From the IMG/VR virus record IMGVR_UViG_3300024503_000485, positions 1 to 64,000 of that record: DNA of 64,000 bases; one strand, 5' to 3'. The stretch's first letter is position 1; every line of letters starts with the position of its first letter. Of the stretch, positions 1 through 57,552 are shown piece by piece. The notes below the pieces were generated by a model. The model was not told the origin of the DNA and did no database searches. It was given only the letters and a program-made list of their open reading frames with translations. The translations under genes were made by a program, and so were the position numbers.

Positions 1-513
1 CATGTCGCGAGCAAACTCTTCGTAGGTCTTACCTTTTGAATTATGCTTAACATAAATCTCAGTAAGATTCTTTTTCATTTTTAAAATCTCTTCTGCTTGA
101 ATTTGAATATCTGTAGCTTGACCACGGGCGCCGCCGCTGGGTTGATGAATCATGTGACGAGCGTTTGGCAACATATAACGTTTACCTTCTGCTCCTGCTT
201 GTGCTAACAAACTTCCCATTGAACAAGCCTGTCCCATAACGTAGGTAGCCACAGGGCATTTAATAAACTGCATTGTGTCATAAATGCTCATGCCTGCTGT
301 AACAACACCACCTGGGCTATTAATAAACAGACTAATTTCTTTATCTGGATTTTCGCTTTCTAAAAATAATAGTTGTGCAACTACAATATTTGCCATGTGG
401 TCTTCAACTTCACCTGTTAACATGACAATACGCTCTTTAAGTAATCTGCTATAGATATCGTATGCACGTTCGCCTTTTGATGTAGACTCAACTACCATTG
501 GTACTAAACTCAT
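1..513 (-). CDS. clpP: ATP-dependent Clp protease proteolytic subunit (3' end runs off window)
   Basis: Manual translation from ATG at 513: [32 protein letters not shown]...[22 protein letters not shown]...[10 protein letters not shown]...[10 protein letters not shown]; catalytic Ser and His motifs present. Confidence 0.95.
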
Positions 514-1449
514 TTATGCTTCCTTAATGTTAGAAATATTTTTTAGTTTAAGCTCTTCCATTAGGTCCGTCAACCATCGTAATACCTTTACATTTGGTTT
601 ATAACCCAGTTCGGCTAATCTTGTAATATCTGCTTCTGTATTTGCTACTGCTCCAACACGTGGCGGAACAACTATTTGTCTATGACTAATAATGTCTGCC
701 AATTGTTTGATACTTACAGATTGGCCTGATCCTAAATTGAATACGTCTCCGTGTTCACCGTACTCTAGAACAATCATAAGACCTTTGATAACATCACTAA
801 CATGAACAAAGTCTCTGCGTTGATCACCACCGCCGTGTAACAACAACGGTTGATTGGTTTCCCAGGCAGAAATAAACTTTGGAATCACTAATGCGTTTTT
901 GCCAAAGTCCATAAAGTCTCCGTACATGGTAAAAGGTCTTATTATTATTAATTCTGTATCCCCAACAAGACTCTGCACGTGAAGTGCCCATTCTGCAGAC
1001 ATCTTGCTCACAGCATAAGGATTGGTTGGCATCAATTGGCTATCTTCTCGTTGTTTGATTGTACCGTTGTTTCCATACACTGAGCTAGAACTTATATAAA
1101 CAAATTTCCTTACACCCATAGTTTGGCATAAACTAAAAAATTTATGTGTTGCTGTTATGTTTACATTATAGTATTCAGCGTACTCATTCCAACTAGGATC
1201 AATCCTAGATCGATTGGCCATATGAACAACAACATCAACTTCTTTAAGATGTTCTTTTAAAACTGGAATATCTTCTGTTATATCGCAATAATGTATTTGA
1301 TTATTGTGCGACCACCCTTCTCGAACACTTTGGTCCCATAAGAACGGAGGTTTATCAATCAATACCGTTTCGTCAAACATTTGTTTTAAGAATGGGGTAG
1401 CATTGCGTCCAAGAAACCCATTTGCTCCAGTGATCATTAATTTGCTCAT
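514..1449 (-). CDS. NAD-dependent epimerase/dehydratase (extended SDR)
   Basis: TGANGFLG Rossmann motif, SSSSVYG, YAVSK (YxxxK). Confidence 0.9.
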   Translation of the reverse strand: MSKLMITGANGFLGRNATPFLKQMFDETVLIDKPPFLWDQSVREGWSHNNQIHYCDITEDIPVLKEHLKEVDVVVHMANRSRIDPSWNEYAEYYNVNITATHKFFSLCQTMGVRKFVYISSSSVYGNNGTIKQREDSQLMPTNPYAVSKMSAEWALHVQSLVGDTELIIIRPFTMYGDFMDFGKNALVIPKFISAWETNQPLLLHGGGDQRRDFVHVSDVIKGLMIVLEYGEHGDVFNLGSGQSVSIKQLADIISHRQIVVPPRVGAVANTEADITRLAELGYKPNVKVLRWLTDLMEELKLKNISNIKEA

Positions 1450-21982: not shown

Positions 21983-23068
21983 ATGGCAAAAGCACAAGAC
22001 GTTTCCGTCCGTCAAGTTGGCCCTAAGGGTGCCAAAAAAGCAATCCGTCACGCAATTAAAATGCGTCGTCCTGTATTCCTGTGGGGCCCTCCAGGTATTG
22101 GTAAGTCCGATCTCGTGAAGCAGATCGGTGATGATTCCAACCGTGAGGTTATTGATGTGCGCCTAGCACTTTGGGAACCCACCGACATCAAAGGTATTCC
22201 GTATTACAACGCAGACCAGGGCAAGATGGTTTGGGCTCCTCCCGCAGAACTGCCCATTGACCCAGAGTCCACTGCTATCATCTTCTTGGATGAATTGAAC
22301 TCTGCTCCTCCTGCTGTTCAGGCCGCGGCCTATCAGTTGGTGCTGAACCGTCGTGTTGGTACCTATGTTCTGCCTAAGGGTGTTGACGTAGTCGCCGCTG
22401 GTAACCGTGAAGGTGACCGTGGTGTTACCTATCGTATGCCTGCTCCGTTGGCTAACCGCTTCCTGCACTTGGAAATGAAGGTGGACTTTGATGACTGGCA
22501 AGATTGGGCTACCCTTAACAAGGTGCATCCTGAGGTTGTAGGTTATGTGGGTTTTGCCAAGCAAGACTTGTATGACTTCGATCCTAAGAGCCCTAGCAAG
22601 TCATTTGCTACTCCTCGTTCTTGGAGTTTCGTCAGCGACCTGTTAGGTGATGACGGTGTTGACGAAGATACTTTGTCTACATTGGTAAGTGGTGCTATTG
22701 GTGACGGCTTGGCTGTTAAGTTTATGGCTCACCGTAAGATTGCTGGCAAATTGCCTAAGGCAGAAGACATCCTTATTGGCAAGGTCAAGGACCTTCAGAT
22801 CAAGGAAGTGTCAGCGATGTATTCTTTGACCGTTTCATTGTGCTACGAGTTGAAAGACCGTGCAGAGAAAAAGGTTAAAGATTGGGATGCTCAGGCAGAC
22901 AACTTCTTCCGCTACATGATGGACAATTTCCCAACTGAGATTGTGGTCATGGGTGCTAAGACTGCTCTTACCAACTACGACTTGCCGTTGGACGCTACAA
23001 AGATGAAGAGCTTTGACGAGTTCCACAAGCGTTTTGGTAAGTATGTTTTGAAAGCGATGGAGAATTAA
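21983..23068 (+). CDS. MoxR-like AAA+ ATPase
   Basis: GPPGIGKS, IIFLDE, AAGNR, PLANRF, TPRSW. Confidence 0.9.
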   Translation: MAKAQDVSVRQVGPKGAKKAIRHAIKMRRPVFLWGPPGIGKSDLVKQIGDDSNREVIDVRLALWEPTDIKGIPYYNADQGKMVWAPPAELPIDPESTAIIFLDELNSAPPAVQAAAYQLVLNRRVGTYVLPKGVDVVAAGNREGDRGVTYRMPAPLANRFLHLEMKVDFDDWQDWATLNKVHPEVVGYVGFAKQDLYDFDPKSPSKSFATPRSWSFVSDLLGDDGVDEDTLSTLVSGAIGDGLAVKFMAHRKIAGKLPKAEDILIGKVKDLQIKEVSAMYSLTVSLCYELKDRAEKKVKDWDAQADNFFRYMMDNFPTEIVVMGAKTALTNYDLPLDATKMKSFDEFHKRFGKYVLKAMEN

Positions 23069-34344: not shown

Positions 34345-35025
34345 ATGTTTGATTCAATTACAACTTATCGTTCAGCTGAAGCTATCAATAGTGCCATGGC
34401 CAGTGTTTATAAACACATGGGTCTAGCAGTATTGACCAGTATGATCGTTTCATTGTTTGTAGGAACCAATCCTGCACTATTGGCCTTTTTCTTTACAGGC
34501 TTTATAAAATGGATTGTTATATTTGCACCGCTGGTAGCTATTATTGCTCTTAGTATGAATATGGATTCTATGAGCAAGGGCACAGCACAACTAGCTCTAC
34601 ATGGCTTTGCCGCGCTAATGGGCTTGAGCTTTGCTACTATCTTTGCTGTCTACACTATGGGCAGTATTTTTTCAGCTTTTATGAGTGCCGCAGTATTGTT
34701 TGGCGTTATGAGCTTTTATGGTTATTTTACCAAGAAGAGTTTAGATAGCCTAGGCCAGTTTATGTTCATAGGCCTAATTGCCATTATCATTGCTAGTCTA
34801 ATCAATATCTTTATTGGCAGCACCTTAATGCAAATGGTTATTTCGGCTATTGCTGTTATTATCTTTCTAGGCCTTACTGCCTACGACACACAAAAGATTC
34901 GAGAAATGGTCAGCTATGATACAGCGGAAGGCAATGCTGAAATTGTTGGCGCACTAACTCTGTATCTTGATTTTATTAATCTTTTCCTAAATCTTCTACA
35001 ACTATTTGGCGGTAGAAAAGATTGA
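34345..35025 (+). CDS. yccA: Bax inhibitor-1/YccA family membrane protein
   Basis: Seven hydrophobic segments; AYDTQKI, GALTLYLDFINLF; promoter TTGACA 34296-17-TATAAT. Confidence 0.9.
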   Translation: MFDSITTYRSAEAINSAMASVYKHMGLAVLTSMIVSLFVGTNPALLAFFFTGFIKWIVIFAPLVAIIALSMNMDSMSKGTAQLALHGFAALMGLSFATIFAVYTMGSIFSAFMSAAVLFGVMSFYGYFTKKSLDSLGQFMFIGLIAIIIASLINIFIGSTLMQMVISAIAVIIFLGLTAYDTQKIREMVSYDTAEGNAEIVGALTLYLDFINLFLNLLQLFGGRKD

Positions 35026-35585
35026 ACGAATATGTTTTATTCCCTACAATAGTTAGGGAATACGATTTCAGCAAGGACCCAGATTTTCATGTCCTTGCTG
35101 ATTTTGTTTCTAAACAAAAAACAGAACCACATAGACTAGTAGGCTGGGCAGAAAGCAGTTACGGTGTAGGCCGTAGTCTTTTTGATAATTTTATTCTCAA
35201 AGGCATACGACAAAAACTACAGGCCGCTGTTGATGCATATATCATTGAACTTGGTATAGCACCAGTTAAAATAACCAATAGTTGGTTTAATAAACTAGGT
35301 CAACATCAACGTGTAGAAACTCATAGACATGAATTAAGTGTTGTGTCAGGAGCATTCTATGTTCATGCAGATCCCGGTAGTGTGGGACTAAAATTATTCA
35401 GTCCTTTGGCACAACTTCGTATGTACGAACAGATTGTAAATCACAATGCTGTTAATGCTAATTTTATTGAAATGGAATGTTGTACAGGTCAGCTAATTTT
35501 ATTTCCTAGCTGGATAGAACACGGAACCGATAATAATCAAACCGATAGTAGAATTACGGTTAGTTTTAATACAGAATATTGTTAG
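35022..35585 (+). CDS. putative 2OG-Fe(II) oxygenase (TIGR02466-like)
   Basis: SWFN...HRH...VSGAFYV...GQLILFPSWIEH...RITVSFN. Confidence 0.8.
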   Translation: MNEYVLFPTIVREYDFSKDPDFHVLADFVSKQKTEPHRLVGWAESSYGVGRSLFDNFILKGIRQKLQAAVDAYIIELGIAPVKITNSWFNKLGQHQRVETHRHELSVVSGAFYVHADPGSVGLKLFSPLAQLRMYEQIVNHNAVNANFIEMECCTGQLILFPSWIEHGTDNNQTDSRITVSFNTEYC

Positions 35586-37568: not shown

Positions 37569-39000
37569 CTTCAGAGCTCATCGAATTTAAAATCTCACGC
37601 AATTTTGTAGATTCGACATTAGCTCTTACTTTACCCAAACTTGCACCTTGTGTAGGATCTGTAATAACTCCATCACTATCTACGTTCTTTGGTGCTTGTA
37701 CGGTTGTTCTTGATTTGATAGATTCGATAATACTAGAACTTCCTCTACTTGCCCCTGCGTGTTCTTGTTCGTCTTCTGGTAGATCAGAAATCTTTAAACT
37801 TTCTAGATTAAATTCTAAATCTACCTTCATACCAACACCGCTAGAACTACGTGTTTTCATAAGTTGAATTTGATAGCGTCCACGTTCACGCATAGCACGT
37901 GATGTAAAAATACCAAACACATTATCTGCGGTTTGAATTTTACTTAAACCACCTGAAATATGTGAATGATCAAATTCTACTTCTTCAACAGCGCCACGAT
38001 TCAACTGACTCGCAGTTACAAGTATACAATTCTTTTCTACTGCTAGATTACGCAATTCTTCCGATACATATTTGTCTTTAATAAACAAATCTGCTGGACT
38101 AATTTTCTTACTCATAGGCATTAATAAGTCTAGATAGTCAACTAACAATACATCAACTTTTCTGCCTGTTTTAATTTCAAATTCTTTTAGATATGCTCTC
38201 AGATCGTTTGCAGTTTTACCAGAAGGCATATATTTGATTTGCAATGCTCCAGATTTCTTTCCAATGATCTTAACTTTCATTTCAACATCGTCAAGATCTT
38301 TAAAAATTTCTTTTGTTGGAATTCCAGTTGTCATTGCATCAATACGCATAGCAACTAAATCTTCCGAAAGTTCTAATGTTAGGTACACGACGTTAAGTCC
38401 TTGCAAACACCAATTAACACCTAAGTTTGCCAAGAACAAAGATTTACCTGCACCCGAACCACCGGCAAAAATATTCAACTCTCCGCGGTTCATTCCACCA
38501 AACAATTTACGATCAAGACTTGGCCAACCTGTGCTAATTTGTCCGTTCTTATCTTTAATTTTTAATAAACGAGCTCTCGGGTCTGCAAAATAATCAGTGC
38601 CCATATCTTTAGTTAAAGATATTTGAACTGCTTCTTTAATCTTCGTTTCAACCTGACCGTAGTCTTTCTTTTCTAATAAATCTGCTGAGTCAATGATTGC
38701 ACGTTCAAGCGCCTTGTGCCTAGTAAAAGACTCGAATTCATCCATTAGCCATTCGTTGTGACCTTCTTTTATATCTTCAGGTTTTTTAAGATCTATCCTG
38801 CAACTTGCATTAACCATTTCATAGTCAGGCAATACAGCATATTCTTTTGCATACACATTGATAAATTCTGCTGCATCTTGTAACTTTCGATCAAACAATG
38901 TGTGATCAAAGATACCTTGACAACGAACAAATACTTCTGCATCTGCAAGCATCAACTCGAGATATAATTTTTGTACTTCGTAATCGTATGTTTTTATCAT
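37555..39000 (-). CDS. replicative DnaB-like helicase (T4 gp41-like)
   Basis: GGSGAGKS, TLELSE, LVDYLDL, TASQLNR, MKTR. Confidence 0.95.
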   Translation of the reverse strand: MIKTYDYEVQKLYLELMLADAEVFVRCQGIFDHTLFDRKLQDAAEFINVYAKEYAVLPDYEMVNASCRIDLKKPEDIKEGHNEWLMDEFESFTRHKALERAIIDSADLLEKKDYGQVETKIKEAVQISLTKDMGTDYFADPRARLLKIKDKNGQISTGWPSLDRKLFGGMNRGELNIFAGGSGAGKSLFLANLGVNWCLQGLNVVYLTLELSEDLVAMRIDAMTTGIPTKEIFKDLDDVEMKVKIIGKKSGALQIKYMPSGKTANDLRAYLKEFEIKTGRKVDVLLVDYLDLLMPMSKKISPADLFIKDKYVSEELRNLAVEKNCILVTASQLNRGAVEEVEFDHSHISGGLSKIQTADNVFGIFTSRAMRERGRYQIQLMKTRSSSGVGMKVDLEFNLESLKISDLPEDEQEHAGASRGSSSIIESIKSRTTVQAPKNVDSDGVITDPTQGASLGKVRANVESTKLREILNSMSSEDETY

Positions 39001-39617
39001 CTTATAATTTTATAATCTACAACAATGCATCGTCTCGGTGTTGACTTTACCGGATATACACCATGTAAGACACTTCCTGTCATTAAAATACAACGCCCTT
39101 CTTTAGGCATTAATGTTTTATAAATCGTTTCCTCACCACCTGCTATTACAGCAAAAATAGAACCCCACGCTGATTCTTTTGGCGGATCTTGCGGTTTATA
39201 ATGATATAAATTATCAAGATAAATGACCTGCGTAACACAATCGCTATCATGATTATGCATACTTTGCCATCCGTTTTCTTGATAGTCCATATACCACGCA
39301 ATAGTTGGCTGAATATTTAAATTCAACTCGTGATCAAATAATGTCTTTTTAGTCCATTCAAAAAGTTTTTCCTGAATGTTTTGCCAATTATTATGTGGTT
39401 TAAAATTGCCTGAAAATTGCCTATGATAAAATGTTTCTGATAATTTATTATCGCACCAAAGTGGATACTGCCTGGCATTGACTGCTACGGTTTCTTTGCT
39501 ATATTCTTTTGTTTCATCTAAATCTGTTGTTAATACAAATAGTTCTTTGTAATTGGGATAAAATGAATCAACAAGCCATTGTGTTCCACTAACATATTTC
39601 ATAACTTTATTATACAC
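38997..39617 (-). CDS. 2OG-Fe(II) oxygenase-like protein
   Basis: AWYMDY...HNHD...VIYL...LHGVYP...RRCIVVD. Confidence 0.65.
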   Translation of the reverse strand: MYNKVMKYVSGTQWLVDSFYPNYKELFVLTTDLDETKEYSKETVAVNARQYPLWCDNKLSETFYHRQFSGNFKPHNNWQNIQEKLFEWTKKTLFDHELNLNIQPTIAWYMDYQENGWQSMHNHDSDCVTQVIYLDNLYHYKPQDPPKESAWGSIFAVIAGGEETIYKTLMPKEGRCILMTGSVLHGVYPVKSTPRRCIVVDYKIIR

Positions 39618-40554
39618 GAACCTCTATGTGTTTTACAACCCCAAGGTTAGCATTCCAGACTCGTTGCTTGGTATGATATAATACAGCACCGATACTACTA
39701 CTAGGATCACCAGGTTGTGGCAGGCTCCAAATATAGTTAAACTTTGGCTCTACTACTGATTTATTTGTTTTACTATTCATCGCGCAACCGCCCATGTATA
39801 CTAGACAATCAGTACCTGTTAGATCTTTGGCTTTTTTCATAACCATATCAACTTGTTCAGTAAACACTTCTTGAACAGCGGCAGCTATGTGATATTTGTT
39901 TTCTTCTGTAACTTCAAACGGCCAATCCCAAATACCTTTATGCATGTTTTTATATGCAGTTACTAAAGTTCCCATATATTCTTTTACAGCAAAATAATAT
40001 TTGTTAGGATCTCCCTTATCGGAATCTTGTTGTAATAAAAATTCATCTTGAACCGGTTTGTAACCAATAAGTTCTGTGAATGCAGAATAAAATAATCCTA
40101 GGCTATTAGGATAATCTTTATGCCAAACTTTTTTAATTTCTCCGTGCTTACCTTCCCAGATACTAGCACATTCCCACTCACCTATAGCATCAAGGACTAC
40201 AATTGCACAATGATTAAAGGGACTGGTATAATATCCGGCAGCAGCATGGCTAGCATGATGTGGGGTATAATGAATCTTTGCATAGTCGGCTCTAATTTGT
40301 CTAATATAATTTGATGGTAATGCAGAAAAATCAAACACTCTATTCCATTGACCTGCATAGGCCTGGCGTGTTTTCTTAACCCAGGGGCGTTCATACCAAA
40401 AAATATTATCCGGAGTCCCTACATCAAGAGCCTTCCTGATAGTGCTACTTTCTAGTGTATCAGATTTATCGAATGTGTTCGAAACAAATTCGTTATTTTT
40501 AAACACGGCTAGACTCGAGCCGTGATTGAGTGCGTTAATTCCCCAATTAATCAT
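39610..40554 (-). CDS. carbamoyltransferase N-terminal (NodU/CmcH, Kae1-like) domain
   Basis: HHASHAAAGYY, VLDAIGE, SLGLFYS, GGCAMNS, PGDPSSSIGA. Confidence 0.85.
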   Translation of the reverse strand: MINWGINALNHGSSLAVFKNNEFVSNTFDKSDTLESSTIRKALDVGTPDNIFWYERPWVKKTRQAYAGQWNRVFDFSALPSNYIRQIRADYAKIHYTPHHASHAAAGYYTSPFNHCAIVVLDAIGEWECASIWEGKHGEIKKVWHKDYPNSLGLFYSAFTELIGYKPVQDEFLLQQDSDKGDPNKYYFAVKEYMGTLVTAYKNMHKGIWDWPFEVTEENKYHIAAAVQEVFTEQVDMVMKKAKDLTGTDCLVYMGGCAMNSKTNKSVVEPKFNYIWSLPQPGDPSSSIGAVLYHTKQRVWNANLGVVKHIEVRV

Positions 40555-41688: not shown

Positions 41689-42519
41689 CTATCTGTATAG
41701 TATCTTGTCAAATGTTCCTGTATTAGGAATTGCCGGTTTGTGTTTGACTCTTAACCATTTCCATTTTCCTTCAATATTTGAATAGGAAAGATTATTAGTG
41801 GTAAAGGTCAGTGTGTCCAATGTGGTCCAGGATGTTGGAGTTCCACCTTCAAACATACTACCTTCTATAGTAACTTCGCCGGAATAATTGGTCATATAAA
41901 AAGCAAAGGTATGTGTGCTTTTTGATGTTGATAATTCATAACTAGCGTCAATTAAACTGCTATAATAAATTGGATTTCCGGTGTCACCTGTTACGCTAGG
42001 CTGTAATAATAAAAACTTTGTTATTTCAATACTATCTAACGGATCGCCTTGGGCATCTCCTTTAATCTCAATAACAGCTTCGGTGCCGTATTGGCTATCA
42101 ATGTATACCGGAGTTTTTTTGGCAACGTATTTGGTTGTATCTGCACTATCTAAAGTACGTTCTTCTTTATAGATGCTATATTGATAAAAACCAGGTCGTA
42201 AATCATAAAGTTCGCTGGCGGTTAACTCGACATTGAGTTTACCAGACGACAGCGTAACTACGGTACAATCTTTGGATAATACAAGTTCTCGATTTTCACG
42301 ATTAACAAGATTAAAAACAAATGAATAGTTTTTGTTTGTTAAATCAATTGCTTTTTCGTCTGAATTTCTAACCTGTATATCTATAGGATTATCAATACCG
42401 CGATAAATTTTTATATTTCTATTATACACTCTACGATACCTCTCTGTTGTCCAAGATCCGGGAACATTTGTATAGACATCGATTCTATTTGGATATAAAT
42501 AAACTGGATTTAGTTGCAT
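41689..42519 (-). CDS. hypothetical protein (possibly structural)
   Basis: beta-rich; YRGIDNPIDIQVRNSDEK; late-type TAAATA upstream. Confidence 0.6.
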   Translation of the reverse strand: MQLNPVYLYPNRIDVYTNVPGSWTTERYRRVYNRNIKIYRGIDNPIDIQVRNSDEKAIDLTNKNYSFVFNLVNRENRELVLSKDCTVVTLSSGKLNVELTASELYDLRPGFYQYSIYKEERTLDSADTTKYVAKKTPVYIDSQYGTEAVIEIKGDAQGDPLDSIEITKFLLLQPSVTGDTGNPIYYSSLIDASYELSTSKSTHTFAFYMTNYSGEVTIEGSMFEGGTPTSWTTLDTLTFTTNNLSYSNIEGKWKWLRVKHKPAIPNTGTFDKILYR

Positions 42520-42548
42520 ACACTAGTGAGCCCTTTAGCATATTTAGT

Positions 42549-42920
42549 ATGAGAATAACAGAAAATTTACAACAAAACTTTCCTTTTATAAGTGTTATAA
42601 ACCACGTAAATCAAGAATACGTGGGTATTATCATTAATCAGGATGCGCAGGTAACCAGCTTTTACGATTACGTAGCATTACGGAGCGAAGAAGAAAAATC
42701 TAAGTTTTTAGAGCTTGGAGAAGCATGGTGGTGGGAATCAAATAGACAAATTCCTATCAACATATTCCTAGCTAAAGAAATACAGGTATTTAGATACGCT
42801 ATTAAAAATTTTGCAACTAAAGATGTAAGGGTAATGTTTGGACCGTGTACTAGTTTAAATGATATTATCACAAAAAGAATTAAGCGTAAATCAATTACAC
42901 TAGTTAGGCGAAGTACTTAA
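42549..42920 (+). CDS. hypothetical phage protein
   Basis: FPFIS...WWWESNRQIPINIFL; start ATG 42549. Confidence 0.7.
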   Translation: MRITENLQQNFPFISVINHVNQEYVGIIINQDAQVTSFYDYVALRSEEEKSKFLELGEAWWWESNRQIPINIFLAKEIQVFRYAIKNFATKDVRVMFGPCTSLNDIITKRIKRKSITLVRRST

Positions 42921-43495
42921 CTAAATCCGTAACTAACACCTTCGCAGATTAGATTCATCTGAACAACAATAGCCATGGCATATGCTGTAGCATGGCTTTT
43001 CTTAAAATAGTATTCGTCATTCTCCGGTTTCGTCCATACTTCCGTCATCACCGTAGTCCAATCTTTGCCAATCAGATAACGTTTCGCTGGGCGTATCATT
43101 GCTAGAATGGCCGCCAGTTGTTCCACACTCTTTGGCTTCATTTGTCTTAATATAGAACCATGCCCGTTTACGTGAAAGAGTAAGTTGACGAAATCGTCTT
43201 GCTCTAAAAGATCCCATAGTGGCTCCGTATTCATTAGTTGGATAAGATGTTCTTCATTACGTACACCTTTGTATATGTGAACATTTAAAAAATCTATCTT
43301 AAAATAACCTAAATCCTCTGCCTGATCGTAAGGAATAGAACAAAGTCCAGAAACGGCATCAACAGGAACATCGTGTAGGTATATTCCTGTATTATGTTTG
43401 ACTAATTTAGTATCTTCAAGTCTACTTGCAGATGTAGTCTTAAAAAATTTAAGAGCCTCGTCTCTGTTAACAAAGTCTATATCGATATCTGGCAT
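42917..43495 (-). CDS. miniature DNA polymerase III alpha (DnaE)-like catalytic fragment
   Basis: PDIDIDF, KHNTGIYL, GYFKIDFL, KPKSVEQLAAILAMIRP, FKKSHATAYA. Confidence 0.85.
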   Translation of the reverse strand: MPDIDIDFVNRDEALKFFKTTSASRLEDTKLVKHNTGIYLHDVPVDAVSGLCSIPYDQAEDLGYFKIDFLNVHIYKGVRNEEHLIQLMNTEPLWDLLEQDDFVNLLFHVNGHGSILRQMKPKSVEQLAAILAMIRPAKRYLIGKDWTTVMTEVWTKPENDEYYFKKSHATAYAMAIVVQMNLICEGVSYGFS

Positions 43496-43719
43496 TACTG
43501 CAACCTAGTGCTTTCAAATAATAATAAAGGTAGTGTGTCTGCTAAGAATTGTGCATATTCTTCGGCATCTTCTTCGTCGTCAAACCCGCTAAATTTAACA
43601 TAAACATCGGGCGAATCAGAACCAACCACTACCTCAATATCAATGTCATCCCTTGAAATAAATTCCTCGTTTTCTTTAAGTTCTTCTTCTACTATCTCTT
43701 CTTTTTGTCGTTTTGGCAT
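43495..43719 (-). CDS. small acidic protein
   Basis: Coupled to the DnaE-like gene. Confidence 0.6.
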   Translation of the reverse strand: MPKRQKEEIVEEELKENEEFISRDDIDIEVVVGSDSPDVYVKFSGFDDEEDAEEYAQFLADTLPLLLFESTRLQ

Positions 43720-44402
43720 TATTGTATCTTCGCCTCCTTGATGACATCTTTAACTAATTCAATATCGGCGGGCAGTGATTTAAAACGTCTAAGCCAGAAC
43801 TGAGGATCAATAACTGGACCAACTATTTCTAACTGCTCGTCGTTCATGCGTGTAAGCATGTCTTTACCAGACTTGCTATTTAACAATATCCATGGACTAA
43901 TTAATCCTTCTCGAATATCGTGAGCAGCTCTATTTAAATTAACAAATGCAAAATAATGTTCCCACGGAGCATTGTTTTTTTCACCCCAATCCATCATAGT
44001 TGATATAGTTCTTTGAATTGCTCCGTCTGCAGGTTCTTTCTTAATCATCTCGGTGATATAAGTTTCGTACAATTCATCTCTACACCAGTGGTCTAATTTC
44101 ACCCCACTTCGTAAAACGTAGTCTATAAACATTTCCGGATAAATGGGGGCGGTGTTAACTAAAAAACTTCCAAATTTTACAAATGCTGTGTAATAAGGAC
44201 TTGATGCAAATTCGTCAAAGGTTTTTTGAACTTTTCCTTTGCTAGACAATTCATAAAATTTCTGAAATGTTAAAAGTCCTGCCTGAACATGTTTTTCATT
44301 TTTGGCTAGGTATCGACGTTTTTGTTCACAAATATGCACGGTCAAAGTTTTTTCTTTGACAAATTCCTTACCGCAATGCTCGCATTTAAAATTTGATTGC
44401 AT
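43719..44402 (-). CDS. C2H2-type zinc-finger protein
   Basis: CEHCGKEF...HIC. Confidence 0.7.
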   Translation of the reverse strand: MQSNFKCEHCGKEFVKEKTLTVHICEQKRRYLAKNEKHVQAGLLTFQKFYELSSKGKVQKTFDEFASSPYYTAFVKFGSFLVNTAPIYPEMFIDYVLRSGVKLDHWCRDELYETYITEMIKKEPADGAIQRTISTMMDWGEKNNAPWEHYFAFVNLNRAAHDIREGLISPWILLNSKSGKDMLTRMNDEQLEIVGPVIDPQFWLRRFKSLPADIELVKDVIKEAKIQ

Positions 44403-44865
44403 TGATTTCTTTTTTATCCCAACCAAGTGACGCACAATATTCCTTAATTTCTTTATCGGTAGATATCATGGCAAGAGTCTCGACATCCGACCATTTCATG
44501 TTTGGAAATAAATTTGCTAAAAACTCTTCTTTTTTGTTTTTCTCACGTTTTAAAGGAAGCCATTCGTGAAAATATGTTTTCTTAGTTTCGTGAGAGCATA
44601 AACACAAAGACTGCCATAAAAGTTTAGGATGTTTTTGTATTCCTGCCCAATTCTTGTTATAAAATTCATTTACGGTTAATACAAAATGTTCTTGTAATTC
44701 TCGATTACTCGATTTTACATTACTAATATAACGTGTAAGATTCCACAAGTCGCCTTTGATTTCTTTACGACCATCTTCTGTAGCAGCATCCCAAAGTTCT
44801 TTTAATCCCATGTCCACTGCTGGGATCATATCTTTAAAAAGGTCTACGTGTTTATTCTTGCCCAT
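44386..44865 (-). CDS. possible clamp-loader small subunit (gp62-like)
   Basis: LTRYISNV...NEFYNKNW...KHPKLLWQ; located in replication cluster. Confidence 0.45.
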   Translation of the reverse strand: MGKNKHVDLFKDMIPAVDMGLKELWDAATEDGRKEIKGDLWNLTRYISNVKSSNRELQEHFVLTVNEFYNKNWAGIQKHPKLLWQSLCLCSHETKKTYFHEWLPLKREKNKKEEFLANLFPNMKWSDVETLAMISTDKEIKEYCASLGWDKKEINAIKF

Positions 44866-49525: not shown

Positions 49526-49942
49526 ATGAGTAAATTTGAAAAAACGTTAAGAAAGAAAGTAGGAAAGCCCCAAAATACTATTCTATTGGGATTAGGGCCT
49601 AGCGAGATTGAAACAGCATCAAACGTTTTTCAATCTGTATTTGTATTTTCTTCTATAGATCAGTCGTTTAAAAATAGAAACGTAATCTATTTTGAAAACT
49701 TTAACGATATGGCCAAATTACCGGAAGTAAATTTTATACTTATTAATCCTGAAAATATTAAAGAAATGCCAAATATTACACCAATATTAAAAAATTCAAA
49801 ACCGCTGGTTATGATACTTTCAGGGGAATATATACATAAACGTTTTTCAAAGTGGCTAATTGAAGAAATGCATTATGAACTAGTTGAACTCGACACTCAT
49901 CGTCAACTATGGAAAAAGAAACGATTATTAGGACAATTATGA
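49526..49942 (+). CDS. hypothetical protein
   Basis: Coupled to gmd. Confidence 0.6.
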   Translation: MSKFEKTLRKKVGKPQNTILLGLGPSEIETASNVFQSVFVFSSIDQSFKNRNVIYFENFNDMAKLPEVNFILINPENIKEMPNITPILKNSKPLVMILSGEYIHKRFSKWLIEEMHYELVELDTHRQLWKKKRLLGQL

Positions 49943-50919
49943 AAAAGACAGCATTTGTAACAGGAATGACAGGACAAGACGGTCCATATCTTGCTAAACT
50001 TCTTCTAGAAAAAGATTATAAAGTATATGGTCTTGTAAAAAGATATTCTAATCCAAATTTAGATAATATCAAATATTTAGGTATTGAAAACGACATTGAG
50101 TTGATCACCGGCGATATTACAGACGACGGATGTATCAACCATTTAGTTAAAAGTCTTAAACCAAATGAATTTTATAATCTTGCCGCTCAAAGTTTTGTAG
50201 GAGCAAGCTGGGACCTTAATAAATTAACCACTGAAGTTAATGCTGTTGGCCCTTTAAATAATCTTAATGCTATTAAGCAGCATAGTCCAGAAACAAAATA
50301 TTATCAAGCAAGCACTTCCGAAATGTACGGTAATAGCATTGAAATTTCCGGAGGACACCAAGACGAAACAACACCGTTCTGGCCCCGTAGTCCATACGGA
50401 GTTGCAAAATTATATGCTTACTGGATCACCGTAAATTTTAGAGAAAGTTACGGAATTCATGCTTCAAATGGAATATTGTTTAATCACGAAAGTCCTATTC
50501 GAGGTAAAGAATTTGTTACAAGAAAAATTACAGATGGCGTAGCAAAAATTAAATGTGGCCTTGCTGACAAAATTACTTTAGGTAATTTAGATTCTAGAAG
50601 AGACTGGGGTTTTGCCGGTGATTTTGTTGAAGCTATGTGGTTAATGTTACAACAAGACGAACCGGGCGATTATGTTATTGCCACAGGAGTTCAATACACT
50701 ATTGGTGATTTATTAGAACGTGCATTTAGATATGCAGGCATCGAAGACTGGGAAAAATATATTGAATCAGATCCAAGATTTAAGAGACCGGCAGAGCTTT
50801 ATAGCCTTTGTGGAAACCCCGCTAAAGCAGAAAATGTCCTTGGGTGGAAACGTAAAACTAGTTTTGACGATCTAGTTAAAATGATGGTTGAAGCAGATAT
50901 CAAACGTTATACTAAATGA
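49939..50919 (+). CDS. gmd: GDP-mannose 4,6-dehydratase
   Basis: TGMTGQDG.YLA, NLAAQSFV, QASTSEMYG, PRSPYGVAK, LFNHESP, RDWG. Confidence 0.95.
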   Translation: MKKTAFVTGMTGQDGPYLAKLLLEKDYKVYGLVKRYSNPNLDNIKYLGIENDIELITGDITDDGCINHLVKSLKPNEFYNLAAQSFVGASWDLNKLTTEVNAVGPLNNLNAIKQHSPETKYYQASTSEMYGNSIEISGGHQDETTPFWPRSPYGVAKLYAYWITVNFRESYGIHASNGILFNHESPIRGKEFVTRKITDGVAKIKCGLADKITLGNLDSRRDWGFAGDFVEAMWLMLQQDEPGDYVIATGVQYTIGDLLERAFRYAGIEDWEKYIESDPRFKRPAELYSLCGNPAKAENVLGWKRKTSFDDLVKMMVEADIKRYTK

Positions 50920-54808: not shown

Positions 54809-55613
54809 TTAACATTCTCCAGGCTGCGCCATTTTTTAATTCATCAATGTGATATTGTCCGTAGGCTAAATGGCAAGCCCATGCATATACTTTATCTTTG
54901 TCGGGATAGTACGGAGTTTCGATTTGACTCAAATCTTGTGATGCAACAGGAGAAGCTGCATGTGTAGGTGCTAGCGTAAATGCAGGATATCCGTATAAAA
55001 TTGCTTCGGTTGCTGAATTTGAATTATATGTAACTAACGCATGAACATCGTCATCAAGTGCTTCTTTTAACGTATTTGTAAGTACACGATCTGTTCTGCT
55101 TTTAACTCGTTGGCGTACAACAATTTCTCTATCTGTATATTGTTTAAGAGTATAGATAGTATCGTTGATCCATTCTTCTAAATCAATATTATAAAACTTA
55201 CAAGGTTTTTCATCAGGGGCTGCAATAAGAATTTTTTTGCCGCCTTTTTTCCAATTGTGAATAGGAATTCCTAATTTTCTAAATCTATCGTCTGGCCTTT
55301 GAATTATAGTATTTCCGTGTTGTATATCGTTTTTAACAATCCTATGCCAATATTTCCAACCCATGGGATTTAATGCACTTTTTTGATTACCCATATATCC
55401 GGTATCCATAAAATAAAAATCTCTATTATCAAACCAACAACGTTGCATGATTTTTTTCTTAAGAATACCTCTAAGGACAATGGGGTCTCTGCTGTGCTCA
55501 TATATAAAATCATCTGTGTTTATCACTCGACCATTAGCGCCAAGTGCAAACATGTTGATATATTCATCTTGTCCGTCTTTACTAAGAAAGATCCAATTGG
55601 TCATCTGTTTCAT
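54798..55613 (-). CDS. GT-B-like glycosyltransferase (KpsS/KpsC-like)
   Basis: YFMDTGY, VTYNSNSATEAILYGYP. Confidence 0.65.
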   Translation of the reverse strand: MKQMTNWIFLSKDGQDEYINMFALGANGRVINTDDFIYEHSRDPIVLRGILKKKIMQRCWFDNRDFYFMDTGYMGNQKSALNPMGWKYWHRIVKNDIQHGNTIIQRPDDRFRKLGIPIHNWKKGGKKILIAAPDEKPCKFYNIDLEEWINDTIYTLKQYTDREIVVRQRVKSRTDRVLTNTLKEALDDDVHALVTYNSNSATEAILYGYPAFTLAPTHAASPVASQDLSQIETPYYPDKDKVYAWACHLAYGQYHIDELKNGAAWRMLNEF

Positions 55614-56371
55614 TGTCTTTCTATATCATCTTCAATGCATTGTTCACCGTATTGAATTTCAACAACTTTCACAGGAACATCAAACGGATTAGTAAGTTGA
55701 TGCCACTCGTTAACTGGTACTTTGTACTCAACGTGCTTTCTTAAATGAACGCTAGGCATAGCGTAACCGCTGTTCATTAGTCTGTTTACTTCTGCTTCAC
55801 CGTCGCTGACTATCCAGTATTCTGCTCTTAATTTATGTCGTTGCATACTTAATTTTTTTCCAGGATCAACGGTTAGTTCTTTTACTTTCATTCCTGGTAC
55901 TTCGTGCAAGACACGATAATATCCCCACGGACGTTCGGTCTTTGGTGCTTTCCATTCTTGTAAAATCCATGAGCTAGAATTCATCTTATGTTCGCCGCCA
56001 ACTCCAAATACAAATTCTAAATTATCGTCTTTAATATCCATTTCGGGAATATTAGCATTTGTTCTATCACCGCCGTTAGCAAATATAATTTTATCGTTGG
56101 GATAAATTTCACGAACTTTTCTAATAGCATCTTTAGCTGAACCGTCGTCGTCGTTAAAATTAATAACTCGAGATACATTTGTTAAAGCGCCTAATATGCT
56201 TGAACGTTCTTCCCAAGGCATAAATTCTTGACCTTTTTTTCTTCTTAACCATGCATCGGAATTTGCACCAACAACTAGAACATCACCTAATTTTTTAGCT
56301 TCATTAATATAAGCAATATGGCCAGAATGAATAGGATCAAATCCTCCAGTAACTAACACTATATTTTTCAT
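55610..56371 (-). CDS. cytidylyltransferase fused to a mannose-6-phosphate isomerase-type cupin
   Basis: TGGFDPIHSGH, FANGGDR; ERPWGYY, LSMQRH, VEIQYG...EDDIER. Confidence 0.85.
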   Translation of the reverse strand: MKNIVLVTGGFDPIHSGHIAYINEAKKLGDVLVVGANSDAWLRRKKGQEFMPWEERSSILGALTNVSRVINFNDDDGSAKDAIRKVREIYPNDKIIFANGGDRTNANIPEMDIKDDNLEFVFGVGGEHKMNSSSWILQEWKAPKTERPWGYYRVLHEVPGMKVKELTVDPGKKLSMQRHKLRAEYWIVSDGEAEVNRLMNSGYAMPSVHLRKHVEYKVPVNEWHQLTNPFDVPVKVVEIQYGEQCIEDDIERQ

Positions 56372-57552
56372 TTTAGTCCTTTCAAAATAGTTTCTAGTAA
56401 TAGTAAATCGTTGTCATTAACAAAATGATTGTTTCCAATATAAACACCAACATCGTGTAATATGTCGGCATTATGAGGGCTGTCTGTTTCAATATTATAT
56501 TTTTTTAAAAATGGATGTTTTAATAAATTTCCACTTACTACAGGCCGATATTCGATGCCGTGTTTTTTAAATTCGTCTAATAGTGTTATATATGTTTCTT
56601 TACTTTTACAAATAAAAGGAAAACAGAAACTACTATTAGTTTCATCTTCTTTAGGAAAAAAGAATTTATCAGGATATTGTTTAATAATTTTTAAATATTT
56701 TTTAAAATTTTCTTTACGGATATGAATCATGCTATCCAATCTTTTTAGTTGTGACATACCTAAAATTGCAGGTAACTCATGATTTCTAAAATTATATCCG
56801 TCTGTCATAAACAGAAAACTAGGAGGCAAGTTTGGATATTCATCTTGATATTTTTTAAAATATTCGGGAGATCCTTCTCTAGCTAGACCGTGACTTCTTT
56901 TTAATCTCATCAATTCATATAATTCTTGATTGTTTGTGGAAATCATTCCTCCCTCAACGGTAGTCATGTGATGGCCGAAATAAAAGCTAAAAGTTGCCCC
57001 TAAAGAATCTGAACCTCTTTTTTTGTTATTAGGATCGCAAACACCGTGTGATTCGCAAATGTCTTCTAGTATGAGCGCATCTGGAAATATTTCTTTGTAT
57101 TTTTCTATTTCAGCATCTAAGCCCAACAGATGTGTGACAAATATTATTTTAATGTCTTTATGTTTATTTTTTAATTTTTTTAACTTTTCAACATCGTAAC
57201 TAAAAGTTGATAAATCAATATCTGCAAAGATTGGTTTAAATCCAGTTTGAATTACTGGGGCAACGTTTGTGACCCATGTACACGCAGGAACTAAAACTTT
57301 ATCCCCGTCTTTAAAATTATATAACTCTTTAATAGCAGATAATAATAATAAATTTGCTGTGCTGCCAGACGAAACAAATAAAGAATATTTAGAACCTAAC
57401 CATTCATTCCACTGAGCCTCAAATAATTTTACTTTTTCTCCGTTAGTGAATTTTTTTGAAGTTAAAATGAACTTGATCATTTTAAATTTGTCTGGCCAAG
57501 TAATTGTATCTTTCATTAAAGGCCATTTTAGTATTGGTGGTTTATTGATCAT
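56368..57552 (-). CDS. colD: ColD-like GDP-4-keto-6-deoxymannose 3-dehydratase (DegT/DnrJ fold)
   Basis: SSGSTAN, LEDICESHG, FSFYFGHHMTTVEGG (His at the usual Schiff-base Lys), GYNFR, EYRPVVSGN. Confidence 0.75.
   Translation of the reverse strand: MINKPPILKWPLMKDTITWPDKFKMIKFILTSKKFTNGEKVKLFEAQWNEWLGSKYSLFVSSGSTANLLLLSAIKELYNFKDGDKVLVPACTWVTNVAPVIQTGFKPIFADIDLSTFSYDVEKLKKLKNKHKDIKIIFVTHLLGLDAEIEKYKEIFPDALILEDICESHGVCDPNNKKRGSDSLGATFSFYFGHHMTTVEGGMISTNNQELYELMRLKRSHGLAREGSPEYFKKYQDEYPNLPPSFLFMTDGYNFRNHELPAILGMSQLKRLDSMIHIRKENFKKYLKIIKQYPDKFFFPKEDETNSSFCFPFICKSKETYITLLDEFKKHGIEYRPVVSGNLLKHPFLKKYNIETDSPHNADILHDVGVYIGNNHFVNDNDLLLLETILKGLK

What the first reader, a model, noticed from the sequence alone, without database searches (positions are those of the whole stretch)
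42917..43495. 192-aa minimal C-family polymerase core in a T4-type replisome
Seen: PDIDIDF right at the N-terminus, then KHNTGIYL, GYFKIDFL, KPKSVEQLAAILAMIRP and FKKSHATAYA. Established: these align in order with DnaE PDxDxDF (two catalytic Asp), HAxGVVI, KxDFLG (third Asp), KPxxxxDLxAxxALxRPG and FNKSHSAAY, which span several hundred residues of a protein over 1100 aa. PHP, the GxGRGS motif, most of the thumb and fingers, the clamp-binding and OB domains are absent. It lies among primase, helicase, a clamp-loader-like gene and UvsW, and no B-family gp43 is in the window. Inference: a split or miniaturised DnaE needing a separate RGS-bearing subunit, or a repurposed nucleotidyltransferase.
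Basis: partly seen in the sequence, partly recalled or inferred. Interest (0 to 1): 0.75.

Follow-up and report, generated by a model that had tools for sequence, protein, structure and literature searches.

The report
Split mini Pol III, catalytic half
This 192-residue phage gene is the catalytic half of a miniature bacterial-type DNA polymerase that jumbo phages encode as two far-apart genes alongside their normal T4-type polymerase; the arrangement was predicted from sequence in 2021 and has never been tested at the bench.

Summary

A separate protein of about 155-180 aa, ending at GxGRGS...EF(F/L)K, is encoded 15-220 kb away in the relatives I compared. For this phage it lies about 2.2 kb beyond the end of the 219-kb contig, as shown by contig walking.

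The phage is not without a gp43. An intact 894-aa family B polymerase lies at about 198-201 kb of the same record.

This arrangement was already described computationally by Iyer et al. 2021 (Viruses 13:63) for "group 2.2" (Rak2-like) jumbo phages, so this is a new member of a known kind. I found no biochemical work on it.

New here: three natural unsplit 375-376-aa versions, probably secondary fusions. They support the view that the two halves form one enzyme.

The parts
42917..43495 (-). C-terminal (Mg2+/template-binding) subunit of the split minimal Pol III alpha, 192 aa
43472..43492 (-). PDIDIDF (residues 2-8). D3 and D5 are the first two catalytic aspartates.
   Evidence: D3 and D5 are invariant and D7 is at least 90% conserved in 89 representatives. 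They align to Taq D463/D465 and to E. coli PDFDVDF 400-406.
43376..43399 (-). KHNTGIYL (residues 33-40), a palm strand. Probable counterpart of DnaE HAGGVV (E. coli 511-516).
   Evidence: H34 and G37 are at least 90% conserved. The model has a strand at 30-39. The equivalence is inferred from order and structural range only.
43286..43309 (-). GYFKIDFL (residues 63-70). K66 and the third catalytic aspartate, D68.
   Evidence: K66 and D68 are invariant. They align to Taq K616/D618 and E. coli K553/D555.
43088..43138 (-). KPKSVEQLAAILAMIRP (residues 120-136), a fingers helix ending in the RP(G) motif
   Evidence: R135 is at least 90% conserved and P136 is invariant. Aligns to E. coli 622-640 and Taq ~686-701.
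42977..43006 (-). FKKSHATAYA (residues 164-173), the fingers FNKSH motif
   Evidence: K165 and H168 are at least 90% conserved. Aligns to Taq 811-816. E. coli FNKSHS is at 756-761.
43495..43719 (-). 74-aa highly acidic ORF directly upstream, joined by TAATG overlaps on both sides. Same transcription unit; its role is unknown.
   Evidence: ORF. 23 D/E against 7 K/R. No detectable homologue at this position in Phosso, Atu_ph07 or 121Q.
43719..44435 (-). 238-aa conserved upstream neighbour (phrog_11058) with a weak C2H2-like N-terminus
   Evidence: phrog_11058, E 1.5e-61. Homologues sit at the same position in Phosso, Atu_ph07 and 121Q, E 1e-52 to 6e-27. The Pfam zf-C2H2 match is below its cut-off.
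42447..42920 (+). Convergent conserved neighbour (phrog_11637). The real start is probably internal, giving about 118-123 aa. Its 3' end overlaps the C-half stop by 4 bases.
   Evidence: phrog_11637, E 7.6e-35 on residues 39-155. Called as 123 aa in L190/L191. Homologues are convergent with the C-half gene in Phosso, Atu_ph07 and 121Q, and next to the unsplit gene in L205.

Best explanation
**What it is.** The ORF is the C-terminal subunit of a two-piece, miniaturised C-family (Pol III alpha/DnaE-like) nucleotidyltransferase. This enzyme is a core gene pair of Rak2-like ('group 2.2') jumbo phages.

**What this half carries.**
- The strand with the first two metal-binding aspartates (D3, D5).
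- The strand with the third aspartate (D68, with K66).
- A trimmed fingers region (R135, P136, K165/K166, H168).

**What it lacks.** The PHP domain, the thumb, the outer fingers, the clamp-binding motif, the HhH region and the OB domain.

**The partner.** The nucleotide-binding part, a helix-GxGRGS-helix, sits on a separate protein of about 155 aa encoded roughly 178 kb away. That protein ends where this one begins, between E. coli residues ~393 and ~399. The Pol-beta-like active site must therefore be assembled in trans from the two proteins, without an intein.

**Likely role.** The pair most likely acts as an accessory polymerase next to the phage's intact gp43-type PolB. Candidate jobs are repair, gap filling, or a share of one strand.

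**Shown here:** homology, fold, conserved catalytic residues, purifying selection, co-occurrence of the two halves, and natural fusions.

**Inferred, not shown:** physical association of the halves, catalytic activity, the substrate, and the role in infection.
For: **Identity**
- phrog_11778, E 3.5e-71.
- 96 isolate phage records carry a homologue, all in this jumbo-phage clade, with conserved synteny.
- 7,843 protein clusters match.

**Homology to DnaE**
- Family profile against the PDB: E 9e-6, collinear segments.
- Foldseek: the top 17 hits are all C-family polymerases.

**Catalytic residues**
- D3, D5, K66, D68 and P136 are invariant across 89 representatives clustered at 50% identity.
- They are also invariant in 52 close relatives.

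**Selection**
- Median dN/dS is 0.13.
- 67 of 76 relatives are exactly 192 aa.

**The partner**
- N-halves with invariant GxGRGS were found in Phosso, 121Q, Atu_ph07, G001, G003 and G004.
- The N-half profile aligns to E. coli alpha 320-393, E 4e-5.
- For this phage, the gene is reached through a chain of 100%-identical overlaps, from the contig to L204 to L194.
- The contig end is collinear with the complete relative G001, whose N-half lies 1.5 kb past the equivalent point.

**Natural fusions**
- P0335, P0399 and P0400 (375-376 aa) join the N-half and the C-half through an 8-residue linker.
- The PF07733 match runs straight through the junction.

**PolB**
- PolB is present and has its exonuclease and polymerase motifs.

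**Literature**
- Iyer et al. 2021 (PMC7824862) describe the same arrangement.
Against: **Untested activity.** No biochemistry exists for any member. I found none in four literature searches.

**Missing DNA-holding parts.** The protein pair lacks a thumb, HhH, OB and clamp-binding elements. Processive or even stable DNA synthesis is therefore not assured.

**The N-half is not on the window's own record.**
- The 219-kb record is about 62% complete.
- The link to L194 rests on 1,733 identical bases.
- Related strains are mosaic in that region.

**No model of the complex.** My model of the unsplit protein was too poor (pLDDT 64) to show the N-C interface.

**No proofreading partner seen.** No DnaQ-type exonuclease was found in the partial record.
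Confidence: 0.8

Rival explanations
1. The two-piece enzyme is catalytically active but is not a templated DNA polymerase. It would be a repurposed Pol-beta-fold nucleotidyltransferase, for example one that adds nucleotides without a template, extends primers by only a few nucleotides, or makes a nucleotide signal.
For: - The thumb, HhH, OB and clamp-binding elements that hold duplex DNA in DnaE are all absent.
- A complete proofreading PolB is already present for replication.
- The Pol-beta fold is shared with many non-polymerase transferases (general knowledge).
Against: - The retained fingers motifs (the RP motif, and the KSH motif aligned to DnaE's FNKSH) are conserved at 90% or more. In DnaE these lie in the fingers region, which by my general knowledge binds the template and the incoming dNTP.
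- The gene sits in the primase-helicase-UvsW block in all relatives.
- Iyer et al. read the C-half as the template-binding part.
Confidence: 0.17
2. The 192-aa protein works on its own, without the N-half. It might be a non-catalytic DNA- or metal-binding accessory factor of the T4-type replisome.
For: - The C-half alone folds confidently in silico (pLDDT 96.3).
- The genes for the two halves are never adjacent.
Against: - The catalytic aspartates are invariant although the NTP-binding GRGS loop is missing from this chain.
- Each of the 11 isolate genomes whose positions I compared carries both halves, and the genus tallies of the two tblastn searches closely match.
- Natural fusions exist.
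Confidence: 0.02
3. It is a decaying remnant of a full-length phage DnaE, that is, a pseudogene fragment.
For: It is one sixth the length of DnaE, and Pfam finds only a sub-threshold finger match.
Against: - dN/dS is 0.13.
- The length is fixed at 192 aa in 67 of 76 relatives.
- There are thousands of homologues of the same length.
- No other DnaE-like sequence lies in the flanks or elsewhere in the record.
- The functional residues are invariant.
Confidence: 0.005
4. The two halves are joined after translation by a split intein, as in cyanobacterial DnaE.
For: DnaE is the classic host of a natural split intein (papers listed).
Against: - The N-half stops 2-10 residues after the conserved EF(F/L)K, and the C-half starts at MPD.
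- Neither half has the roughly 100-aa or 35-aa intein piece.
- The natural fusions need only an 8-residue linker.
Confidence: 0.005

Closest known systems
Split minimal DNA polymerase III alpha of group 2.2 (Rak2-like) jumbo phages, C-terminal protein (Iyer, Anantharaman, Krishnan, Burroughs & Aravind, Viruses 2021, PMC7824862; PHROG 11778)
   Same: - The length, the start at PDxDxDF and the motifs match.
- The N-terminal partner is encoded far away.
- It co-occurs with a family B polymerase and a T4-type replisome.
- Gene neighbours are conserved.
   Different: - Nothing essential differs. This copy is from an uncultivated phage, 55-56% identical to the nearest isolates (Phosso, Atu_ph07).
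- Its partner lies off the assembled contig.
- The paper does not mention unsplit natural forms, which exist.
Bacterial replicative Pol III alpha (DnaE; E. coli 2HNH, Taq 2HPI/3E0D, M. tuberculosis 5LEW) and PolC (3F2B)
   Same: - It has the Pol-beta-like palm with three aspartates.
- It has the K-x-D strand, the RPG motif and the NKSH fingers motif.
- 188 of 192 residues superpose.
   Different: - The chain has no PHP domain and no GRGS motif.
- It has no thumb, no outer fingers, and no clamp-binding, HhH or OB parts.
- The two halves total about 346 aa, against 1,160.
- The active site is divided between two gene products.
Cyanobacterial intein-split DnaE
   Same: DnaE is encoded as two distant genes.
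   Different: - The split site is different.
- There are no intein halves here, so no trans-splicing is expected.
Full-length DnaE-type polymerases of other phages (phrog_405; group 3.2 jumbo phages such as phage G)
   Same: They are homologous in the palm and fingers (E 6e-10).
   Different: - Those are single chains of about 1,100-1,200 aa with a PHP domain, and they serve as the main replicase.
- Here the main replicase is PolB.

Membership tests
Split minimal Pol III alpha of group 2.2 jumbo phages, C-terminal subunit (PHROG 11778) | Full-length match to the family profile of about 197 positions | tested here: met
   phrog_11778, E 3.5e-71; residues 3-185 match profile positions 8-193 of 197.
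Split minimal Pol III alpha of group 2.2 jumbo phages, C-terminal subunit (PHROG 11778) | Standalone protein that begins at the PDxDxDF strand and keeps the three aspartates and the fingers motifs | tested here: met
   M1-P2-D3; D3, D5, K66 and D68 are invariant; R135, K165 and H168 are at least 90% conserved.
Split minimal Pol III alpha of group 2.2 jumbo phages, C-terminal subunit (PHROG 11778) | A separate GRGS-bearing N-terminal subunit encoded at a distance in the same genome | tested here: met
   It is not on the 62%-complete record. It is reached through 100%-identical overlaps, contig to L204 (10,000 b) to L194 (1,720 b), where a 154-aa N-half sits at L194:2349-2813 (PF07733, 52.7 bits). 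The complete relative G001 has both halves, and the contig end is collinear with G001 just short of its N-half gene. Caveat: strains are mosaic at the contig end.
Split minimal Pol III alpha of group 2.2 jumbo phages, C-terminal subunit (PHROG 11778) | Accompanied by a family B polymerase and T4-type replisome genes | tested here: met
   PolB of 894 aa at G000 198284-200968 (phrog_262, E 2e-199) with the FDIEV, SLYPS, KxxxNSLYG and YGDTDS motifs. Primase, DnaB-like helicase, UvsW, UvsX, gp32-like SSB and ligase are in the window.
Split minimal Pol III alpha of group 2.2 jumbo phages, C-terminal subunit (PHROG 11778) | The two halves form one active enzyme | not testable with these tools
   Support is indirect only: co-occurrence and natural fusions. 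The model of the fusion was unreliable.
Canonical DnaE / Pol III alpha (C-family replicase) | N-terminal PHP domain | tested here: not met
   The ORF starts at the PDxDxDF strand, and there is no PHP match in Pfam.
Canonical DnaE / Pol III alpha (C-family replicase) | Palm with three catalytic aspartates in the C-family fold | tested here: met
Canonical DnaE / Pol III alpha (C-family replicase) | GxGRGS nucleotide-binding loop in the same chain | tested here: not met
   It is absent from the 192-aa protein and present on the separate N-half.
Canonical DnaE / Pol III alpha (C-family replicase) | Thumb, full fingers, clamp-binding motif, HhH and OB domains; Pfam scores above the gathering cut-offs | tested here: not met
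   The D-to-H spacing is 31 residues against 110, so the thumb is gone. The protein ends 24 residues after the KSH motif. PF17657 scores 15.2 bits, below its 22-bit cut-off, and PF07733 gives no match.
Intein-split DnaE | Split-intein halves flanking the break | tested here: not met
   The N-halves end 2-10 residues after EF(F/L)K, and the C-half starts at MPD. There are no extra domains, and the natural fusions have an 8-residue linker.

The most novel reading that the evidence does not exclude
The two proteins (about 155 + 192 aa) assemble a working C-family DNA polymerase whose active site is built in trans. That would make it the smallest C-family polymerase known. The natural 375-aa fusions found here would then be a ready-made single-chain minimal Pol III core for structural and enzymatic study, and a way to test whether such minimal forms resemble the ancestor of bacterial Pol III.
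Probability: 0.45. Interest if true: 0.65.

Novelty: new member of a known kind. Interest (0 to 1): 0.38.

Why it matters
**Why the enzyme is interesting.** C-family polymerases are the bacterial replicases. They are large, multi-domain proteins, and their origin is debated. A version cut down to about 350 residues and divided between two genes, kept under strong selection in thousands of jumbo-phage genomes next to a complete T4-type PolB, raises two questions:
- What is the minimal C-family catalytic unit?
- Why does a phage need a second, unrelated polymerase?

**Why this copy is not new.** The arrangement was already published from sequence analysis in 2021, so this window adds no new concept.

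**What this analysis adds.**
- Evidence of purifying selection on the C-half.
- A confident structural model of the C-half.
- The exact break point in DnaE coordinates.
- Natural unsplit forms, which make the enzymology easier to approach.

Tried and rejected
1. **N-half in the window's own record.** I searched with PF07733, phrog_405, tblastn using six N-halves, an HMM and a GRGS motif scan. Nothing was found. The best HMM hit was an open frame at the contig end (E 0.016). I rejected it because it has no start codon, the alignment is poor, and it looks antisense to a minus-strand gene.
2. **Contigs L201/L203 as the continuation of the contig.** They share only 100-110 identical bases and then drop to 77-89% identity, so they belong to a related strain. 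I rejected them in favour of L194/L202.
3. **Longer contigs carrying the identical C-half.** None of those shown reaches the N-half.
4. **Modelling the whole enzyme through the natural fusion.** MAFFT repeatedly stacked the N-halves on the C-terminal part (A3, A5, A7). A usable alignment (A8) was shallow, and the model was poor (pLDDT 64, pTM 0.44). I discarded it.
5. **Single-sequence PDB search.** It was only marginal (E 1.3). A profile was needed.
6. **A DnaQ-type exonuclease in the record.** None was found. The record is incomplete, so this is not informative.
7. **The upstream 74-aa acidic ORF as a conserved partner.** No homologue was detected at this position in distant relatives.
8. 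**Literature on biochemical characterisation.** Four searches found none.

Full report
**1. The observation**

The window holds an ATG-initiated ORF of 192 aa at 42917..43495 on the minus strand.
- PDIDIDF at residues 2-8
- KHNTGIYL at 33-40
- GYFKIDFL at 63-70
- KPKSVEQLAAILAMIRP at 120-136
- FKKSHATAYA at 164-173

I fetched E. coli K-12 dnaE so as not to rely on memory. Its counterparts are:
- GPGRGS 359-364
- FERFLN 388-393
- PDFDVDF 400-406
- HAGGVV 511-516
- KFDFLG 553-558
- FRPGP 638-642
- FNKSHS 756-761

The order is identical and every spacer is shorter. The window/E. coli spacings are 31/110, 34/44, 67/84 and 31/119 residues. After the KSH motif, 24 residues remain here against 400 in E. 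coli.

**2. Is the resemblance real homology?**

- Pfam alone is nearly blind to this protein. It gives only a sub-threshold DNA_pol3_finger match (15.2 bits against a 22-bit cut-off).
- PHROGs places the protein full-length in phrog_11778, labelled 'DNA polymerase' (E 3.5e-71). It also matches the 1,190-position DnaE-type phrog_405 (E 6e-10).
- A profile of 89 diverse homologues (representatives of 50%-identity clusters) hits only Pol III alpha chains in the PDB. These are Taq, E. coli and M. tuberculosis, at E 9e-6 to 2e-4, in three collinear segments.
- That alignment puts window D3 and D5 on Taq D463 and D465, and K66 and D68 on Taq K616 and D618. From my knowledge of the Taq Pol III alpha papers, D463, D465 and D618 are that enzyme's catalytic aspartates.
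- hhalign against E. coli DnaE aligns window 54-138 to 541-642 (E 9.5e-5).
- The AlphaFold2 model built on this alignment is very confident (mean pLDDT 96.3, pTM 0.88).
- In Foldseek, the 17 best PDB matches are all C-family polymerases, and everything below them has probability under 0.1.

So the protein is a version of the second half of the palm plus the inner fingers, compressed to about half the usual length and with the thumb removed. The pairing KHNTGIYL = HAxGVVI fits this picture. H34 and G37 are at least 90% conserved, and the model has a strand at 30-39. No alignment reproduced that pairing residue by residue.

**3. Not a pseudogene**

- Among 76 close relatives fetched from IMG/VR, 67 are exactly 192 aa.
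- In 139 informative pairs (0.05 < dS < 1.5), the median dN/dS is 0.13, with a range of 0.047-0.347.
- All key residues are invariant.
- Across the 89 distant representatives, mean column identity is only 26%. D3, D5, K66, D68 and P136 are still invariant. D7, H34, G37, R135, K165 and H168 are at least 90% conserved.
- The family is very large: 7,843 protein clusters at E <= 0.001, at least 549 IMG/VR loci and 96 isolate phage records. The clusters nearest to it in the ESM Atlas are 95-99% viral.

**4. The missing half**

The three complete isolates I examined were Sinorhizobium phage Phosso, Agrobacterium phage Atu_ph07 and Escherichia phage 121Q.
- Each has a second ORF of about 177-180 aa far from the first. 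It matches Pfam DNA_pol3_alpha positions ~16-98 above the cut-off, and phrog_405 positions 360-437.
- These ORFs end in G(V/L)GRGS...(Y)(E/D)LDxxEFL(N/K/E)-stop.
- A profile of 25 such N-halves has an invariant GxGRGS motif. It hits only Pol III alpha structures, and N-half residues 81-154 align with E. coli 320-393, ending at ...LLFERFLN.

The break therefore falls between E. coli residues ~393 and ~399. That is between the helix that follows the nucleotide-binding loop and the strand that carries the first two aspartates. There is no room for intein halves.

The two halves occur together in each of the 11 isolate genomes whose positions I compared, and the genus tallies of the two tblastn searches closely match. 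The distances between them include:
- XacN1, about 15 kb
- 121Q, about 31 kb
- RaK2, about 34 kb
- PA5oct, about 44 kb
- Atu_ph07, about 182 kb
- Phosso, about 224 kb

**5. The missing half in this phage**

The window belongs to a 219,444-base IMG/VR record estimated at 62% complete. The N-half is not on it.
- The last 15 kb of the record is collinear with the 100%-complete relative G001 (364.5 kb; its C-half is 69% identical).
- The record stops at the point equivalent to G001 190,332. G001's N-half is at 191,877-192,362.
- An exact 32-mer from the contig end recovered 12 IMG/VR contigs.
- L204 is 100% identical to the last 10,000 bases and runs 1,607 bases further.
- That extension is 100% identical over 1,720 bases to L194, L202 and L197.
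- L194 carries a 154-aa N-half at 2349-2813 on the minus strand. It ends ...VWGVGRGSSVASYVLYLIGVHKIDSIKYNLPIEEFFKEI (PF07733, 52.7 bits).
- In this phage the gene would sit at about 221.7-222.1 kb, roughly 178 kb from the C-half and on the same strand.
- Caveat: strains are mosaic just upstream of this junction. L202 and L197 are only 78-91% identical there. The link is therefore strong but is not a closed genome.

**6. The phage has a normal replicase**

- An 894-aa family B polymerase lies at 198,284-200,968 of the record (phrog_262, E 2e-199).
- It has both the exonuclease and the polymerase Pfam domains, and the FDIEV, SLYPS, KxxxNSLYG and YGDTDS motifs.
- All three isolates examined also have PolB.
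- The window itself carries a T4-type set:
  - ligase
  - endonuclease V
  - DnaB-like helicase
  - primase
  - UvsW-like helicase
  - UvsX
  - gp32-like SSB
- I found no clamp loader in the window. The AAA protein at 21983-23068 is MoxR-type.

**7. Comparison with what is known**

Iyer et al. 2021 (PMC7824862, section 3.4.1 and Fig. 3b) report the following for group 2.2 jumbo phages, a group that includes Atu_ph07:
[quoted passage not shown] - They suggest that it cooperates with PolB in synthesis of one strand or in repair.

This window's ORF is the C-terminal protein of exactly that system. Many GenBank records already label one or both halves 'DNA polymerase (III alpha)'. I found no experimental study.

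**8. What is added here**

- **Natural unsplit forms.** P0335 (375 aa), P0399 and P0400 (376 aa) are 78-81% identical to each other and come from independent ENA and Logan assemblies.
  - Each consists of an N-half, an 8-residue linker and a C-half.
  - The Pfam DNA_pol3_alpha match runs uninterrupted through the junction (residues 97-207).
  - The gene sits in the C-half locus, because its convergent neighbour is homologous to the window's.
  - In a maximum-likelihood tree the three form one clade (100/100). That clade nests inside well-supported clades of standalone C-halves (100/96 and 100/94).
  - The fusion is therefore probably secondary, unless the root lies on their own branch (midpoint root only, and the bootstrap had not fully settled).
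  - This is 'Rosetta stone' evidence that the halves act as one enzyme.
- **Other additions.** These are the exact break point in DnaE coordinates, the selection data and a high-confidence model of the C-half.

**9. Mechanism and limits**

- **Shown:** homology, fold, conserved metal-binding and fingers residues, selection, co-occurrence and fusions.
- **Inferred:** the two chains associate so that the GRGS loop of the N-half completes the Pol-beta-like active site over D3, D5 and D68, and the enzyme transfers nucleotides to a primer.
- **Open question:** with no thumb, HhH, OB or clamp-binding elements, it is unclear whether this is a distributive DNA polymerase (gap filling, repair, primer hand-off) or a different kind of nucleotidyltransferase.
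- **Model not used:** my attempt to model the whole enzyme through the fusion failed (pLDDT 64) and is not used.

**10. Verdict**

- The implied absence of gp43 does not hold for the genome.
- The system belongs to a kind already described computationally, so this is a new member of a known kind.
- Interest is moderate, because the enzymology is untested and can now be approached through the natural fusions.

Noticed in passing
L205:1066-2193 (P0335); also P0399 and P0400: These are natural single-chain versions (375-376 aa) of the otherwise split mini Pol III: N-half, 8-residue linker, C-half. They nest among standalone C-halves in the tree, so the fusion is probably secondary. The 2021 description of the family does not mention them.
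   Followed up: yes
window 43495-43719 (-): This 74-aa ORF is very acidic (23 D/E, 7 K/R). It is wedged between the 238-aa gene and the C-half gene, with TAATG stop/start overlaps on both sides. No sequence homologue was found at this position in Phosso, Atu_ph07 or 121Q. Of 80 close relatives, 44 have an ORF of at least 50 aa that ends at the C-half start.
   Followed up: partly
window 43719-44435 (-) and 42447-42920 (+): Two proteins of unknown function (phrog_11058 and phrog_11637) flank the C-half gene in every relative examined, from 121Q to this phage. The first is 238 aa with a weak C2H2-like N-terminus. The second is about 118-123 aa and convergent, with its 3' end overlapping the C-half stop by 4 bases. 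The second also sits next to the unsplit gene. Either could be a functional partner.
   Followed up: partly
G000 219,319-219,444 (contig end); L194, L201-L204: The record ends in a stretch shared at 100% identity by several strain variants that differ on one side or the other. L202 and L197 are 78-91% identical upstream and 100% identical downstream. L201 and L203 are the reverse. This mosaic junction probably broke the assembly about 2.2 kb short of the N-half gene.
   Followed up: yes
L194:1711-2109 (-), L106:1995-2387, L024:744-1079: In this lineage, in G004 and in Atu_ph07, the N-half gene is followed by a small ORF of 76-136 aa and then a Cpn10/GroES-like gene. The N-half therefore has its own conserved neighbourhood, distinct from that of the C-half.
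   Followed up: no
window 38997-40554 (-), 35022-35585 (+): A carbamoyltransferase-N-like gene (314 aa) and a putative 2OG-Fe(II) oxygenase are inserted between the helicase and the primase. A second 2OG-Fe(II) oxygenase is nearby. In Phosso and 121Q the primase and helicase genes are adjacent. These may be nucleotide- or DNA-modification genes.
   Followed up: no
window 514-1449, 49909-50919, 55610-57552: This is a set of sugar-nucleotide genes in a phage replication region: an epimerase, a GDP-mannose 4,6-dehydratase (Pfam E 8e-116), a heptose kinase/adenylyltransferase-like gene and an aminotransferase. They may serve DNA hypermodification or host surface remodelling.
   Followed up: no
window 21983-23068 (+): This AAA+ ATPase is MoxR-type (AAA_5, AAA_3, bpMoxR; phrog_1297). 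It matches the MoxR-vWA chaperone pair that Iyer et al. report for group 2.2 phages. It is not a clamp loader.
   Followed up: partly
W02 (Atu_ph07) 212336-213688: In Atu_ph07 the family B polymerase matches fall in two open frames (418 and 578 aa), so its PolB appears to be in two pieces. In the window's genome it is one 894-aa frame.
   Followed up: no
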